Origin: Magallana gigas
Lineage: Eukaryota
Assembly (NCBI RefSeq): GCF_963853765.1
Contig: NC_088860.1
Location: 9,796,001-9,860,000, forward strand
Length of the DNA stretch: 64,000 nucleotides
Direction of reading: 5' to 3'
Shown here: one piece after another, positions 43,236 to 58,587 of the stretch
How the letters are laid out: every line of letters begins with the position of its first letter
How positions within the stretch are numbered: position 1 is the stretch's first letter
Notes under the pieces: generated by a model
Database searches by the model: none
What the model was told of the DNA's origin: nothing
Seen by the model: only the letters and a program-made list of their open reading frames with translations
Position numbers and translations under genes: made by a program

Positions 43236-44795
43236 TTATGAATGATCACCTGGTAAAAGGTACAAAAATGTCATTTGAAAGAAAACCACAAGAACGTTGA
43301 TTTCTAGTACCACGTGAGCGGCTGCGCTGGACCCATCCTGTACACCAGTCATATTTCCCGTGAATGTTTTCGGTGTAGATGTCTTGGGAGAAAGGCATCC
43401 CTCTCGAGGACACGGTGGACAGTCACGGGGACGGTTTGGGTTTTCTGGGGCACACTCTGGGCGTGGCCTGCCTCCACCTCCTCCCCCGGACCCCGTTCCG
43501 GAGTTTACACAATGACAGAGGTAATAACTGTATCCATAGTTCTCCAGATTCCAATCTGTAAACGAACGTGAAGGAAATTTAAAATCAAATTGTAATAAAC
43601 TGGTTAGAACTGAGTCATGTAGATATTAACCTTGTCATTATCCATAGTGATATGAATCACAATCGGTTTGCTTAAGAAACAAAGGAGAAAATACTCATGA
43701 TCAGAGGATGTAAAAAATTTTAATACTAAAGAATGCTTTCTGCTGGAGAGCTGAGTTTTGCAAAAGAATGCATTGATGCGTATTTGAACTTACGTGTATT
43801 GTTCGAGGAACAGTTATACTGTGTCATTGTGTTTGGATTCACCACGCGTCCTTTGAAACATCCTAGATAATACGGAAATTTATCCGTCACATAATACCTG
43901 TAGCTCCCATTGACAACCTTCCCGTGACATTTTTCCAGCTCTGATTCCGTCACATTCTGCGACTCGCTCACCCTTGGTCCATAAATAGGAAACCCATCTA
44001 AAGCCACACCAATGAACTCTTCAACATCTCCCTTGTACATACAGCTCTCGGGAATCTTGTGATAGTGATAAGCCCCATCTGGACTCGCATGTCCATCACA
44101 TTTATCAAACACTTCGGGAGACGCCCCCTCTACGGCGTTAGACAAATCTCCCGCCAGAGGATTGTAGATGGCGACACCTGTTCTTGTGATCCCAATCATC
44201 CCTAATCCCACACAGCCCGGAACGGGCACTATTTCGGGAGTTTTGGGAATGGACAGGTTATAGTTCTTGGCTGTAGCGGTATTGGGGTTCACTTTCTCCG
44301 TTTCGTGATCAGGTAGACCACTGGCGGATATGTACAATCTAGGAATTAAACGGTAATTAATACACTGTATCATTATGCATTACATTTATCAAGTCTTTAT
44401 CAATATATTATTTGGAAACACCGTATTGCCCATTGTTAAGGATCTGGGTGATCAACAAATTATATAACTAATCGTAAGATCTGACTTAAACTGTGCTATA
44501 TAATAATTTTGGCCAATAAACTAACAAGAAAAAATCTTTAAATTTAGACATTTAACTTTCCTTTATCTTTAAACAGGGTACTTCTTCATAAGGATCGAGG
44601 TAATTATAGCCTTCAAAAGAAATCATGAAACCCTTACACAGCACTGTCACTCTCGTACACGGCGACCGAGGCACCATACTTCCCTGTGGCCTTGAACTGC
44701 ACGATCTCTTCCCTCGTTAGTCCAGCTGAGGAGAGGACCATAAGACTTGGACCTAAAGCCATTAGGACAAATATCCAAATGGTTGCGCTCCTCAT
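43236..44795 (-). CDS. YHYH-domain secreted, probably GPI-anchored protein, copy 1 (340 aa); exons 44795-44638, 44338-43794, 43555-43236
   Basis: GT-AG introns, phases 2 and 1, 1023 nt open. N-terminal MRSATIWIFVLMALGPSLMVLSSA signal; DKCDGHASPDGAYHYH and IGVALDGFPIYGP motifs of the YHYH family; Gly run, CAPENPNRPRDCPPCPREGC, Thr-rich stalk and a hydrophobic C-terminus. Confidence 0.88.
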
Positions 44796-47700
44796 ATCTT
44801 ATATTTCCCTACAAAAAGCGAACACAACTCAACTGTAGTACGAAATACAGAAAACATCTTTAACTTGATCTTCCACGTGTACAGTCGACTAAATATACAT
44901 TGTGTAAAGCAATTTACTTGGTGTACAATTTTATGGTATCTCTACAGATATGGCAAAATGAAAGACTTATTTTATTTTAATCTTCTCGGTGATTCTTTTT
45001 CATTAATTTCTTATATATGACATAGAAAGTAAATGAAACATCAGGTATTAACAAGCAGGCTGACGGACATAAATAGTTTGAAATATTACTGTATTTGCGC
45101 TTTACAAAACCTTCCGTTACTATAGTCGTTTTTTTTTTCAAATAGATTTTGTTGATTAAATAATATAACATTTAAATCTAAGAAAGTACATATTAGAATA
45201 GCTATAACGTTTATGAAAATGTTAAATTTAGAGAATTACACTGGTATTCAAATTGTTTTGCTTCTTACAAAATCACCGCCAAAAAACTGAAACAACCCTA
45301 ACGTGCTCTATTTTTACACCATGACGTTATATTGTCAGCTCCAAACAAACAAACAAACAAAACGATCGGTTAATATTTTGATGTATACAACATACTCATT
45401 AAATAAAGTAAGTCCAAATATGCCTTTCACAGATTACAATGTAGTTCCAGTGACTCCAAGAATATATAGTCCCCAGACTATCGAGACAGAGGTTATGCAA
45501 CCAGTCACAACAGATGCACGACTCTAGGACGTGCCCTGGGACCGTAGGAGGGATGTCCGTCTTTATTTTAACAAATATCCGCCACCATGTGCACAAAATG
45601 TTTCAGGAAATTCGAGATTCTATCAGTTATTACGTATATATATATTATGTCAGGTTGGTTTTCAGTTGTCAACTTATTTTGATACAAAGAAACTCAATAC
45701 TAGTATAGTATTAAGGAATGTTTTTATCCAGATTGAAAAGTACTTCCCAAAAAATTCTTTAATGTGCATGGATTGTAACAGCGGCAGGTTTTTATTTTCT
45801 CGCTACCTAGATCTACATGATTGTATTTGATACTCCAAGCCTTAAAGATTTTCAAAAACGTCACGACACAGATATGATCCGTATTTAAATGTATACGAGG
45901 GGATTTTGCCATTCATCAAAAACGTACCTAAAGATACGTGATGTAAAAATAAAATCATATACAAACTAAATACACAGAACAAGAAAAACGTCCTTAGTTA
46001 ATATATACTCACTGAAATAAATTGTAGCCATAAGTTGAGTTATTTACAAGAAATTGTCCATATGTTTAAAATCTTGTTTCAATTCAAAGAAAATTGACTT
46101 ACCAAGAGAAAATACGTATTGGGACTGACTTCTGATCGGTCAAAACATTAATTTCATTACGTATACCCGTCGAAATGTTAAATTTGGAATTAACTTGTGC
46201 AAGGTTATACATCGGTATGCATAACTATCATTTTTTTTTACTAGCATGTTTATTCCTGTGTTGACCTATCGCTAACCAGTGATTGAGAAAACATGCGAGG
46301 TCCGATTTGATTGCGTTATATACTATAGTGCTTTGAAAAAAGAAGGGCACACACGATTTCAATAAACAAAAACCAATATATCTCATCACAAACCAATTTT
46401 TTTAAGATATCTCTTAAAATCAAGATATTAGTACACTAACCTTCTTGGTGGAATCTCTGAATTCATTGTTTATAATAATATATAAGATCGACAAACTGCT
46501 AAACTTAGAACTAGAAAAGAACACCTTAATTCGACGAACAATGGGGTGAGGGGAAGGGTGCAGCACAATATATTAAGATACTGGTGAAGCATCATAAGAT
46601 ATGGGCAAAAAACAAAGCAGTAAAGACAAGATAGTGCCTAGATCATGGATAATGGTCGACCCATGATGATATGCCTAAAGGAATGAAAATAACACTCACC
46701 GAAAAGAATAAGAATACAGTAATAGGAGGAGATGAAAAAGACTCCAAGCCATGTATAATAGAGTATAGTAAATATACATACACAGAAACAATAGCAAAAT
46801 AGGAAGTAAGCAGTGGAACACTAATTAACCGTACAACAAATGTAACGGTTGACAGGCATAGCTCATCACCGAGTCTACCCTTTAAGATTAATAATAAATA
46901 TATACAACGATTTGGGCAGTAAAACCTAAGGTCAAATAACAAGCGAACAGTTAGAGCACACCCCAGATGTTTGCCAGTGCAAAAATGGATGGAATGTCAT
47001 AAAAAACAAACAAACAAACCAACAAAACAAAAAAAATAAAGAAAAAAACAACCAAAAAAAAACTCCAACAAAAACACCAAGAAACATAACGTATGTAAAG
47101 AGCTGTGTATTTATTTTCTTTGATACATATTCTTTATAATATCAAAATAATAGTGCCTTTTTTTCCTAAACATATTCATAAAAAAACCCAGCTTCCAACC
47201 AGTTTTAAGGTTTTAGAGAACTCAACAACACATGGAAACAATATATACCTTCTTTCCTTTGTAAAATTATTTGTAAATCAATTAATTGGGTGTGAAATAT
47301 AATCTGTTTTACGGTATCTTTTCCTAATTAGCTATAGAGTTTAGAAGTTACATATAAGTCCTGTTAGTTATTGTCAAGAGGAATTAAAATAATTTACGAG
47401 CCAACATTGAAAACTTTGTCATGAATTGTATAGTAATTTAGGCTTCCTTAGTTACCTCACGTTATGTTCAAATAAACCAATCTAGAGGTATCGTAATGTC
47501 CCTGTTCCGAAGAATCTTAATAAAATGTTAGTTACATGTACATTGATGTTGTCAGGAATTTTTTTTTTTTATCAAATTAAGGATTTCAAGCCCATATTTT
47601 AAACTAAAATTCCTTTGATTTGAATTTGAAATTGAAGGGTTAAATTTTATTTTCACGATTAATATTGTCCTATCTTGTTTGATTATCTAAGGAAGTCTTT

Positions 47701-57700: not shown

Positions 57701-58587
57701 TTGTACAGATATAACAAAGATAAGGGAGTTTTATAATACCTTCATACTTCTACACACAACCAAATGTTTACAAATTTCAACCACTCTTTTATACTAATAA
57801 TAAAATATTGTTGATTAATCTGTGTAAATTCATTAAAGTTATAATTGAGAGAGTAAGCTCTCTAGGTTAATTGCTAATCATACTTCTTTCCCTTTTTTTC
57901 ACTTTTGTATTGTCACTCCAATGCATGTAATGTATGTATTATATGTATTATTGTTCAAATTTTTTTGTGATTTTTCTCAACACTGTAATTTATGCAGTTC
58001 AGAGAATAAAGAAATTGTCATTGTCATTATCTGGCGCTTGTCCTCCGATCCCACAATTTGTACCTCTAAGTAAACTATCTGAACCCAGTTCACCGGACTT
58101 TAATTTACCTGTACACTTCATCAGAAAAGAGAGAACTCTATTACAAAAAGGAAACTTTGTATCAAATTTACGCTGATATATTTTCCGCGATTCGGAAATC
58201 GTCGCGAACAAAGCGGAAATTAGATACACGCGGAAAAAACCCCTGATATACGGTAATTGTATCATCAATACTTCCCTTCGAATTGTCATGCTATAAATTG
58301 GAATGCTGTAAAAACTTAATCAATGGAAACTCAACAAGCAAATATTTAGTTAAAAATGCAATATTTTTTAAAAGGAATTTAATTTTTTTTACTTGTATTT
58401 ATTTTCTATATAAAACAGAAAACCCTTACACAGCACTGTCACTCTCGTACACGGCGACCGAGGCACCATAATTTCCCGTGGTATTGAACTGCACAATTTC
58501 TTCCCTCGTTAGTCGAGCTGAGGAGAGGATCAGAAGGCTTGGATCAAAAGCCATTAGAACAAATATGAAAATGGTGGCACCTCTCAT
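53655..58587 (-). CDS. YHYH-domain secreted, probably GPI-anchored protein, copy 3 (338 aa); exons 58587-58430, 54812-54268, 53968-53655
   Basis: Exon 1 MRGATIFIFVLMAFDPSLLILSSARLTREEIVQFNTTGNYGASVAVYESDSA is 158 nt like its paralogs. Intron 1 is expanded to 3617 bp by a TE. YHYH and GVALDGFPIYGP motifs are intact. Confidence 0.88.
55071..58253. mobile_element. 3.2-kb non-autonomous Tc1/mariner(pogo)-like TIR element with nested repeats, inside intron 1 of YHYH copy 3
   Basis: TA|CCGTATATCAGGTTTTTTCCGCGT ... ACGCGGAAAAAACCCCTGATATACGG|TA. TA TSD; no transposase ORF. Confidence 0.85.
56757..57663. repeat. About 20-21-bp tandem array (TTTACAGATTAAAGTGTGAA / TTTACACTTTAAAGTGTGAA) ending in GTGGCACTAATACACTTCCGTA terminus
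   Basis: About 40 tandem units. The right end resembles the CTTCCGTA termini; no left TACGG end found. Confidence 0.92.

What the first reader, a model, noticed from the sequence alone, without database searches (positions are those of the whole stretch)
43236..58587. Tandem family of intron-containing, GPI-anchor-type YHYH-domain surface proteins
Seen: three 3-exon genes encode a signal peptide, a YHYH domain (DxCxGH...YHYH; GxAxDGFPIYGP), a Gly run, a compact Cys/Pro motif (CAPENPNRPRDCPPCPREGC), a Thr-rich stalk with N-glycan sequons, and a small-residue site (DGSSAA/DGSNAA) before a terminal hydrophobic tail with no cytoplasmic domain. Known: YHYH (Pfam 'YHYH protein') is a function-unknown domain that I know mainly from bacteria; its conserved His/Asp/Cys residues suggest metal binding. 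Inference: this is a domesticated, possibly horizontally acquired, cell-surface metalloprotein or enzyme that is actively duplicating in an animal. Plausible roles are mucosal or mantle-surface defence, metal handling or biomineralisation. This is the best candidate for an undescribed system in the window.
Basis: partly seen in the sequence, partly recalled or inferred. Interest (0 to 1): 0.8.

Follow-up and report, generated by a model that had tools for sequence, protein, structure and literature searches.

The report
Oyster GPI-type YHYH surface protein genes
Three neighbouring oyster genes encode secreted, probably lipid-anchored proteins built on the uncharacterised metal-binding 'YHYH' domain; the family is old in marine invertebrates rather than a recent bacterial import, and its function is still untested.

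Summary
Three minus-strand, 3-exon genes (A 340 aa, B 338 aa, C 338 aa) have GT-AG introns and score 75-81 bits on Pfam YHYH (PF14240, cut-off 25). Each has a signal peptide, a Gly run, a Cys/Pro motif, a short Thr/Pro linker and a GPI-type C-terminus.

Gene A is 99% identical to RefSeq XP_011453859.1, "uncharacterized protein LOC105346835" of Crassostrea gigas.

Gene B is a chimera. It has the 5' part of A and the 3' part of C, made by a 5237-bp unequal crossover inside exon 2. The two units differ at one base over 5258 bp, so the event is very recent or an assembly artefact.

Recent gene transfer is not supported. Named relatives from Mollusca, Annelida, Echinodermata, Hemichordata, Cephalochordata and Tunicata form one clade, and most keep the hydrophobic C-terminus. 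An ancient bacterial origin stays possible.

The domain model is confident (pLDDT 89.5) but matches no solved structure. The conserved residues are three His (136, 144, 146) and Asp 131, 167 and 188.

My best reading is a membrane-tethered extracellular metalloenzyme, most likely a hydrolase of microbial cell-wall or glycan substrates. Metal handling is the main rival. It is a new member of a known, uncharacterised family.

The parts
44638..44795 (-). Gene A exon 1: start codon, signal peptide, N-terminal 52 residues
   Evidence: model with donor GTAAGG. The sequence is identical to gene B exon 1.
43794..44338 (-). Gene A exon 2: YHYH domain
   Evidence: Pfam PF14240, E 1.7e-21. An RNA contig covers 43794-44351 with one difference.
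43236..43555 (-). Gene A exon 3: end of the domain, Gly run, Cys/Pro motif, linker, GPI-type tail, stop codon
   Evidence: The junction 43555|43794 (CT..AC on the + strand) is seen in runs X1 and X2.
49875..50032 (-). Gene B exon 1 (identical to gene A exon 1)
49031..49575 (-). Gene B exon 2: chimeric YHYH domain, A-type at its 5' end and C-type over the rest
   Evidence: Pfam E 8.2e-21. Three-way comparison of the copies.
48418..48731 (-). Gene B exon 3 (identical to gene C exon 3)
58430..58587 (-). Gene C exon 1 (89.7% identical to exon 1 of A and B)
54268..54812 (-). Gene C exon 2: YHYH domain with every invariant residue intact
   Evidence: Pfam E 1.1e-22; residue check
53655..53968 (-). 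Gene C exon 3
43785..54815 (.). Tandem duplication with a 5237-bp period. Block 43785-49578 matches 49022-54815 at 99.4%, and is 100% identical over about 5 kb in the middle.
49506..49526 (.). 21-bp crossover window inside gene B exon 2. Gene B matches gene A on the 5' side and gene C on the 3' side.
   Evidence: the last B=C site is 44268+5237 and the first B=A site is 44290+5237.
49246..49246 (-). The only base private to gene B. It changes Gly163 to Val at a position invariant in the family.
43933..43933 (-). Gene A codon 188. The window reads Glu at an otherwise invariant Asp. Other runs read the Asp allele.
   Evidence: G at 43933 in all depth of X1 and X2, and in 7 of 12 of X15..

Best explanation
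These are three tandem genes of a Pacific-oyster-type genome. They encode secreted, N-glycosylated proteins that are most likely GPI-anchored, with a single YHYH (PF14240) domain as the ectodomain.

Shown:
- Gene structure, family membership and domain order.
- Purifying selection on the domain.
- Gene B arose (or was assembled) by unequal crossover between exon 2 of an A-type and a C-type gene.
- The family forms one metazoan clade across six invertebrate phyla or subphyla.

Inferred:
- The domain holds a metal ion, probably Zn, on three His. These sit on two neighbouring beta-strands (H136 opposite H144, with H146 two residues on), and conserved Asp 131, 167 and 188 are further candidates.
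- The protein works as a hydrolase held at the outer face of epithelial cell membranes.
- The most likely substrate class is microbial cell-wall or other glycan/peptide polymers. That would place it in antibacterial defence or in digestion of bacteria by suspension feeders.
For: Membership and architecture:
-.
- AlphaFold DB fold clusters return only other YHYH proteins, all at probability 1.00.

Metal site:
- D131, H136, H144, H146, D167 and D188 are invariant in 26 sequences.
- The strands 135-137 and 143-145 form a hairpin in both models.
- Iyer et al. 2021 (PMC7824862) predict a Zn site of three His plus Asp and a phage-tail hydrolase.
- The N-Zinclopedia preprint predicts a 3-His Zn site in PF14240.

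Cell-wall link:
- In the nearest bacterial clade, 3 of 35 proteins add PG_binding_1 and 2 of 35 add SLH.
- P0121 has YHYH in the catalytic slot of an endolysin-like layout.
- Cyanophage virion structural proteins carry the domain.

GPI-type tail:
- It has small residues, a spacer of about 8 residues, a 16-17-residue hydrophobic end, and 1-5 residues after that (B/C 2, A 5).
- The same layout occurs in sea urchin, tunicate, amphioxus, annelid and many bivalves.

Selection: dN/dS between A and C is 0.13 in the domain, against 0.37 in the C-terminal part.

Expression: exons are covered and the intergenic DNA is not, in transcriptome-sized runs.
Against: - No activity, metal content or anchor has been measured for any YHYH protein.
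- The fold matches no solved structure. Foldseek found nothing at E <= 0.001, and VIA-align found no Z >= 2 among 48,161 chains. No catalytic mechanism can therefore be borrowed.
- Only 5 of 35 nearest bacterial relatives carry wall-binding modules.
- Other bacterial contexts point to metals rather than walls. These are a multicopper-oxidase operon, NicO transporters and a ZnuA fusion next door.
- I could not read model coordinates, so clustering of the ligands rests on the strand register only.
- No GPI or signal-peptide predictor was available.
- The predicted intron 1 junction was not seen in the RNA contigs I laid. Plus-strand-spliced (antisense) forms are abundant there.
- In this assembly, copies A and B each carry a change at an invariant residue (E188, V163).
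Confidence: 0.55

Rival explanations
1. Metal-handling protein rather than hydrolase. In this reading it is a GPI-tethered extracellular Cu or Zn binding or redox protein, working like the fungal GPI-anchored LPMO-like copper proteins (X325/Bim1). It would capture, buffer or deliver metal at the cell surface.
For: - In 12 betaproteobacterial loci, an fn3+YHYH gene starts directly at the stop of a multicopper oxidase gene. An OmpR-type regulator and a histidine kinase lie nearby.
- P0160 lies beside NicO Ni/Co transporters.
- A cyanobacterial neighbour carries a ZnuA domain.
- The order 'signal peptide, metal domain, Ser/Thr/Pro linker, GPI signal' is that of such fungal proteins (from my own knowledge).
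Against: - The 12 loci come from one bacterial order, so they count as about one observation.
- That clade is far from the metazoan one.
- No fold match to LPMO-like or cupredoxin structures.
- An N-terminal His brace is absent: the mature N-terminus is about GLTREE.
Confidence: 0.2
2. Non-catalytic surface binding or adhesion module. The YHYH domain would act as a lectin-like or matrix-binding unit, with the conserved His/Asp holding a structural ion.
For: - Metazoan relatives occur as tandem arrays of 2-7 domains, or fused to 29 or more TSP1 repeats, as matrix or adhesion proteins often are.
- Phage versions are virion structural proteins.
Against: - The invariant set of three His plus three Asp, kept from bacteria to animals, is more typical of an active site.
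- In P0121 the domain sits where a catalytic domain is expected, next to a wall-binding module.
Confidence: 0.15
3. The three-gene array is partly an assembly artefact. The genome would carry only genes A and C, and gene B with its identical 5.2-kb unit would be a false tandem copy.
For: - Zero differences over 5258 bp of mostly non-coding DNA apart from one base, in a highly polymorphic species.
- In DNA run X15, the word depth over the duplicated spacer (5.5-12.6) is not higher than over the A-specific part (5.7-11). The tool warns that depth is not a copy number.
Against: - The chimera has a clean single breakpoint inside 21 bp of exon 2, as unequal crossover produces.
- Gene B has one private substitution.
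- The assembly has 29 contigs for 564 Mb. By my own inference this implies long reads, which would span a 5.2-kb unit.
Confidence: 0.25
4. Recent horizontal transfer from bacteria into the oyster lineage, followed by domestication.
For: - The family is mostly prokaryotic: 2776 clusters at E <= 1e-3.
- The nearest non-metazoan clade holds a Patescibacteria MAG protein and lies on bacterial contigs.
Against: - Metazoan sequences from six phyla or subphyla form one clade, with Lophotrochozoa nested in it.
- Bivalves share the 3-exon layout.
- The genes are flanked by a rhodopsin-type GPCR and an NF-YA exon.
- GC content is the same as the surroundings.
- A fourth paralogue lies on another chromosome and has an extra intron.
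Confidence: 0.03

Closest known systems
RefSeq XP_011453859.1, uncharacterized protein LOC105346835 (Crassostrea gigas)
   Same: It is 340 aa and 99% identical to gene A over the domain. It has the same exon junctions and the same C-terminus.
   Different: - It has a few allelic differences from gene A; for example it has Asp188 where the window has Glu.
- The record carries no function.
- I did not see genes B and C as separate named records.
Pfam PF14240 YHYH proteins of bacteria and phages
   Same: - Same domain, with HMM scores three times the cut-off.
- Same invariant residues: D..H, YHYH, DGFPIYG, LDxC.
- Same predicted fold.
   Different: - Bacterial versions are lipoprotein-like. They may be fused to fn3, PEBP, PG_binding_1 or SLH domains, or to phage virion proteins.
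- The animal versions instead add a Gly run, a Cys/Pro motif and a GPI-type signal.
- Identity to GTDB bacterial proteins is only 24-39%.
Endolysin-type and LAS/M23-type zinc peptidoglycan hydrolases
   Same: - A beta-rich domain with an HxH motif plus a further His and Asp.
- Association with PG_binding_1 and with phage virions.
- Hedgehog's N-terminal domain is a precedent for a lipid-tethered animal protein descended from such enzymes (from my own knowledge).
   Different: - No fold or sequence similarity was detected.
- The order of the motifs differs.
- No activity is known.
Fungal GPI-anchored LPMO-like copper proteins (X325/Bim1)
   Same: The same overall layout: signal peptide, small metal-binding beta domain, Ser/Thr/Pro linker, GPI signal. 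This comparison rests on my own knowledge.
   Different: It has no N-terminal His brace and no fold match. The link to copper rests only on one bacterial operon type.

Membership tests
Pfam YHYH (PF14240) | HMM score above the curated gathering cut-off (25 bits) | tested here: met
   75.3, 77.5 and 81.4 bits for exon 2 of B, A and C.
Pfam YHYH (PF14240) | Conserved motifs D-x-C-x-G-H, Y-H-Y-H, D-G-F-P-I-Y-G and L-D-x-C | tested here: met
   All are present in A, B and C. The exceptions are E188 in the window's gene A and V163 in gene B.
Pfam YHYH (PF14240) | Same predicted fold as other family members | tested here: met
   Foldseek against AlphaFold DB clusters: the 30 best hits all have probability 1.00 and E 4e-34 to 4e-13; most are named YHYH, the rest carry no or another name.
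GPI-anchored surface proteins | N-terminal signal peptide | tested here: inconclusive
   There is a hydrophobic core (maximum 9-residue hydropathy 2.9-3.2) and an SSA|G site. No dedicated predictor was available.
GPI-anchored surface proteins | C-terminal signal: small omega residues, polar spacer, hydrophobic end, no cytoplasmic tail | tested here: inconclusive
   - The tail runs DGS(S/N)AA, then a spacer of about 8 residues, then a 16-17-residue hydrophobic run, with 2 (B, C) or 5 (A) residues after it.
- The run is too short for a typical transmembrane helix.
- The pattern is conserved across phyla.
- This is my own heuristic only.
GPI-anchored surface proteins | Release by PI-PLC, or a lipid anchor detected | not testable with these tools
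   This needs an experiment.
Zinc peptidoglycan hydrolases (M23/LAS, amidase_2, endolysins) | Shared catalytic fold or sequence family | tested here: not met
   - No PDB sequence hit.
- No Foldseek hit at E <= 0.001.
- No VIA-align Z >= 2.
- No Swiss-Prot model hit.
Zinc peptidoglycan hydrolases (M23/LAS, amidase_2, endolysins) | Catalytic domain combined with a wall-targeting module in relatives | tested here: inconclusive
   3 of 35 nearest bacterial relatives carry PG_binding_1 and 2 of 35 carry SLH. None of the animal proteins does.
Zinc peptidoglycan hydrolases (M23/LAS, amidase_2, endolysins) | Measured wall-lytic activity | not testable with these tools
   This needs an experiment.
Recently horizontally transferred gene | Nested inside a bacterial clade and absent from related animals | tested here: not met
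   - The 22 named metazoan rows form one clade (SH-aLRT 92).
- Relatives occur in six phyla or subphyla.
Recently horizontally transferred gene | Foreign composition, no introns, or bacterial flanks (contamination) | tested here: not met
   - Two spliceosomal introns per gene.
- GC 0.33-0.39, like the rest of the window.
- A GPCR and an NF-YA exon as neighbours.

The most novel reading that the evidence does not exclude
The animal YHYH proteins are a so far unrecognised class of GPI-anchored, zinc-dependent hydrolases of microbial cell walls, with a fold that has no solved relative. They were acquired once from bacteria before bilaterians diverged. They were kept in marine suspension and deposit feeders (bivalves, annelids, echinoderms, hemichordates, amphioxus, tunicates). 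They are still turning over by unequal crossover in oysters.
Probability: 0.2. Interest if true: 0.7.

Novelty: new member of a known kind. Interest (0 to 1): 0.45.

Why it matters
YHYH is a large family with no measured function and no solved structure. It has 2776 clusters at 50% identity in the library searched.

The animal branch described here is secreted, probably lipid-anchored, under purifying selection, and shared by invertebrate deuterostomes and lophotrochozoans. Oysters therefore offer a tractable eukaryotic entry point. They have a small gene family of four loci, a natural chimera, and natural variants at invariant residues (E188, V163).

If the cell-wall hydrolase reading holds, it adds a new enzyme class to invertebrate antibacterial defence or bacterial digestion. 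If the metal reading holds, it adds a surface metal-handling protein in animals that concentrate metals. Either way the finding turns an 'uncharacterized LOC' into specific experiments.

Tried and rejected
Searches that found nothing:
- PDB sequence search.
- Foldseek against PDB on the full-length and the domain model: best E 0.55-0.71.
- VIA-align against 48,161 chains on both models: no Z >= 2.
- Swiss-Prot AlphaFold models.
- NCBIfam: no family for the oyster domain.
- ESM Atlas: only YHYH clusters.
- Paper search for LOC105346835, XP_011453859 and PF14240. No paper deals with the animal proteins. Only four papers mention the domain at all.
- The look-up of encoding contigs for P0001: not on record. 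I therefore could not compare the array with another assembly.
- Earlier findings near this place: none.

Partial or failed runs:
- The look-up of sequencing runs was busy at the first try and was repeated unchanged.
- The poly-A raw-read run X21 gave only 4 reads, all in the 3' UTR of gene B or C. No expression level or strand profile could be obtained.
- My single read laying stretch ended at 49140. The gene B crossover window and V163 were therefore not tested against reads.

Ideas rejected:
- Contamination, and recent transfer into the oyster.
- Membership of carbonic anhydrase, M23/LAS or LPMO-like families, for lack of any fold match.
- Biomineralisation as a favoured role: nothing found here points to it.

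
Full report
**What is there**

The window is G000:C8:9796001-9860000 of a 564-Mb assembly in 29 contigs. Its best protein match is a Crassostrea gigas RefSeq protein.

ORF listing and hand-checked splice sites give three minus-strand genes of three exons each:

| Gene | Exon 1 | Exon 2 | Exon 3 | Length |
|---|---|---|---|---|
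| A | 44638-44795 | 43794-44338 | 43236-43555 | 340 aa |
| B | 49875-50032 | 49031-49575 | 48418-48731 | 338 aa |
| C | 58430-58587 | 54268-54812 | 53655-53968 | 338 aa |

- All six introns are GT..AG.
- Intron phases are 2 and 1 in every copy.
- Gene C's first intron is 3617 bp and holds a 21-bp tandem array.
- Exon 2 of each copy scores 75-81 bits on Pfam YHYH, against a cut-off of 25.
- Each has 12 Cys and 6-7 N-glycan sequons.

**The array is two paralogues plus a chimera**

- The block 43785-49578 matches 49022-54815 with a period of 5237 bp. It is 100% identical over about 5 kb in the middle.
- A three-way comparison of exon 2 shows that gene B equals gene C at 24 of the 25 variable sites from 43883 to 44268 (gene A coordinates); the 25th (44009) is gene B's private base described below. 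Gene B equals gene A at all 8 sites from 44290 onward.
- The switch therefore lies in a 21-bp window, 49506-49526.
- This is the product expected from unequal crossover between exon 2 of an A-type and a C-type gene. Gene B has A's promoter, exon 1 and intron 1, and C's intron 2 and exon 3. The spacer is duplicated.
I had derived it independently.
- Gene B has one private base, at 49246. It changes the invariant Gly163 to Val.
- One difference in 5258 bp, in a very polymorphic animal, means a very recent event or a false assembly copy. I put the real event at about 0.75.

**Selection and variants**

- Between A and C, dN/dS is 0.13 in the domain, 0.30 in the signal-peptide part and 0.37 in the C-terminal part.
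- The window's gene A has Glu at the invariant Asp188.
- A-type RNA contigs in two studies carry the Asp codon at 43933, and 7 of 12 of the word depth at that site in a DNA run does too.

**Transcription**

- Twenty public runs from 12 studies hold the stretch.
- Fourteen of them are transcriptome-sized, with 38-81 million letters of contigs. They hold 45-75% of the sampled words, and the exon share of the query is 78%.
- In runs X1 and X2 the exons of gene A are covered and the 3.6-kb spacer is not.
- The junction 43555|43794 (minus-strand GT..AG, intron 2) is present in both runs.
- The predicted intron 1 junction was not seen in those contigs.
- Instead both runs show a joint that skips 44352-44575. 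X1 also shows a joint that skips 43519-44574.
- Both joints have GT..AG on the plus strand, good donor and acceptor context, and the same acceptor.
- I read these as an abundant spliced antisense RNA. I cannot exclude an allele effect.
- Intron 1 splicing is supported elsewhere: by a Logan contig protein (P0002) that reads across the exon 1-exon 2 junction, by the RefSeq model, and by the same layout in Mytilus.

**Relatives and origin**

- A word-indexed search found 43 relatives. They include bivalves (Pinctada, Mytilus, scallops, Saccostrea, C. virginica), the annelid Owenia, and Branchiostoma.
- An exhaustive HMMER search found 2776 clusters at E <= 1e-3, and 72 at E <= 1e-30.
- Name look-ups added a brittle star (6 domains in 1631 aa), Strongylocentrotus, Saccoglossus (fused to TSP1 repeats), Styela, further bivalves, and the oomycete Aphanomyces.
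- In a FastTree of 192 domains and an IQ-TREE of 70, the IQ-TREE puts all 22 named animal rows in one clade (SH-aLRT 92). Mollusca plus Annelida are nested inside it (SH-aLRT 88).
- That clade sits within a starred group (97), unresolved with two others:
  - A bacterial clade (99). It contains a Patescibacteria MAG protein, and two of its members lie on contigs of about 300 kb with bacterial genes.
  - A mixed unnamed clade that includes the oomycete.
- GTDB Actinomycetota, Cyanobacteriota, Gemmatimonadota and Pseudomonadota lie on the other side. They are 24-39% identical to the oyster protein.
- So the genes are not a recent import.
- An ancient acquisition is compatible with the intron data:
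  - The sea urchin gene is intronless.
  - Amphioxus has three introns at other positions.
  - The bivalves share their two.
  - The oyster's fourth paralogue, on contig C4, has an extra intron inside the domain.
- The tree is unrooted and most rows are unnamed. Direction and date of any transfer therefore remain open.

**The C-terminus**

About 26 of 37 animal relatives examined end in a hydrophobic run, preceded by small residues and with almost nothing after it. They include sea urchin, tunicate, amphioxus, annelid and most bivalve proteins. A few scallop and oyster paralogues instead end in charged or His-rich tails. The GPI-type signal is thus an old feature of the animal branch. No dedicated predictor was available, so this stays a heuristic.

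**Structure**

- The domain model (residues 24-252, built from 49 aligned sequences) has pLDDT 89.5 and pTM 0.89.
- Neither it nor the full-length model matches any solved structure or any Swiss-Prot model.
- AlphaFold DB clusters return only other YHYH proteins.
- H136 lies in strand 135-137, and H144 and H146 lie in strand 143-145 of the same hairpin. By strand register, the three side chains should therefore face one side. I could not check coordinates.
- Asp131, 167 and 188 and two probable disulfides (133-152, 190-213) are also conserved.

**Function**

- The literature holds two predictions and no experiment. One is a Zn hydrolase of phage tails (PMC7824862). The other is a 3-His Zn site in an uncharacterised family (bioRxiv 10.64898/2026.10.18.759936).
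- My own checks add three points for a cell-wall substrate:
  - PG_binding_1 in 3 and SLH in 2 of the 35 nearest bacterial proteins.
  - An endolysin-like layout in P0121.
  - The domain in cyanophage virion proteins.
- They also add points for a metal role:
  - fn3+YHYH genes abut a multicopper oxidase gene in 12 loci of one betaproteobacterial order.
  - NicO and ZnuA occur as neighbours elsewhere.
- I therefore commit to a membrane-tethered extracellular metalloenzyme, most likely a hydrolase of microbial wall or glycan polymers. I give about 0.3-0.35 to that specific reading and about 0.8 to the general reading of a surface YHYH metalloprotein.
- Metal handling (0.2) and a non-catalytic binding role (0.15) are the rivals.

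**Verdict**

- It is wrong, or at least unsupported, about recent horizontal acquisition.
- The genes are new members of a known but uncharacterised family, and gene A already exists in RefSeq as an uncharacterised protein.
- Interest is moderate. It rests on the orphan fold, the conserved lipid-anchor signal across invertebrate phyla, and the testable link to cell walls or metals.

Noticed in passing
window 43466-44963 (the same sequence also lies at +5237): Plus-strand GT..AG joints appear in transcriptome-like runs. One skips 44352-44575 (X1 and X2). One skips 43519-44574 (X1). Both use the same acceptor, at depths equal to or above the sense-spliced form. This looks like a spliced antisense RNA over genes A and B. 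An allele effect is not excluded.
   Followed up: partly
window 56756-57613: A 21-bp tandem array of about 41 copies (86% matches) lies inside the 3617-bp first intron of gene C. It accounts for the low GC and the GC skew of that stretch.
   Followed up: no
L076 700-3621; L051 592-3603; ten further Burkholderiales loci: In these bacterial loci, an fn3+YHYH gene starts at the stop codon of a multicopper oxidase gene. A MipA-family protein, an OmpR-type regulator and a histidine kinase lie nearby. This is a conserved operon that suggests a copper context.
   Followed up: partly
L086 6001-7455 (P0121); alignment A3: In the bacterial clade nearest the animal proteins, YHYH is fused to PG_binding_1 (3 of 35) or SLH (2 of 35). 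One member also carries a metallo-beta-lactamase domain.
   Followed up: partly
L004 (G000:C4:25273547-25276762): A fourth YHYH paralogue of the same genome lies on another contig. It has an extra intron between DEFLG and VALDG, and it is most like a Saccostrea protein.
   Followed up: partly
P0008 (Logan contig protein): This is a copy of gene A exon 2 with C-to-T changes throughout (Pro to Phe/Leu, Thr to Ile, His to Tyr). It looks like a bisulfite-type library assembled as ordinary DNA. It sits on a long branch in trees.
   Followed up: no
L088 3001-4053; L087 3001-5010; L089 3001-7086: The sea urchin homologue is intronless. The amphioxus homologue has three introns at positions not shared with oyster. 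Mytilus shares the oyster's three-exon layout.
   Followed up: yes
window 4178-5383 (-) and 33890-34303 (-): There is a single-exon rhodopsin-family GPCR of 401 aa (7tm_1, E 9e-70), and an exon with the end of an NF-YA (CBFB_NFYA) domain. These are ordinary animal neighbours of the array.
   Followed up: partly
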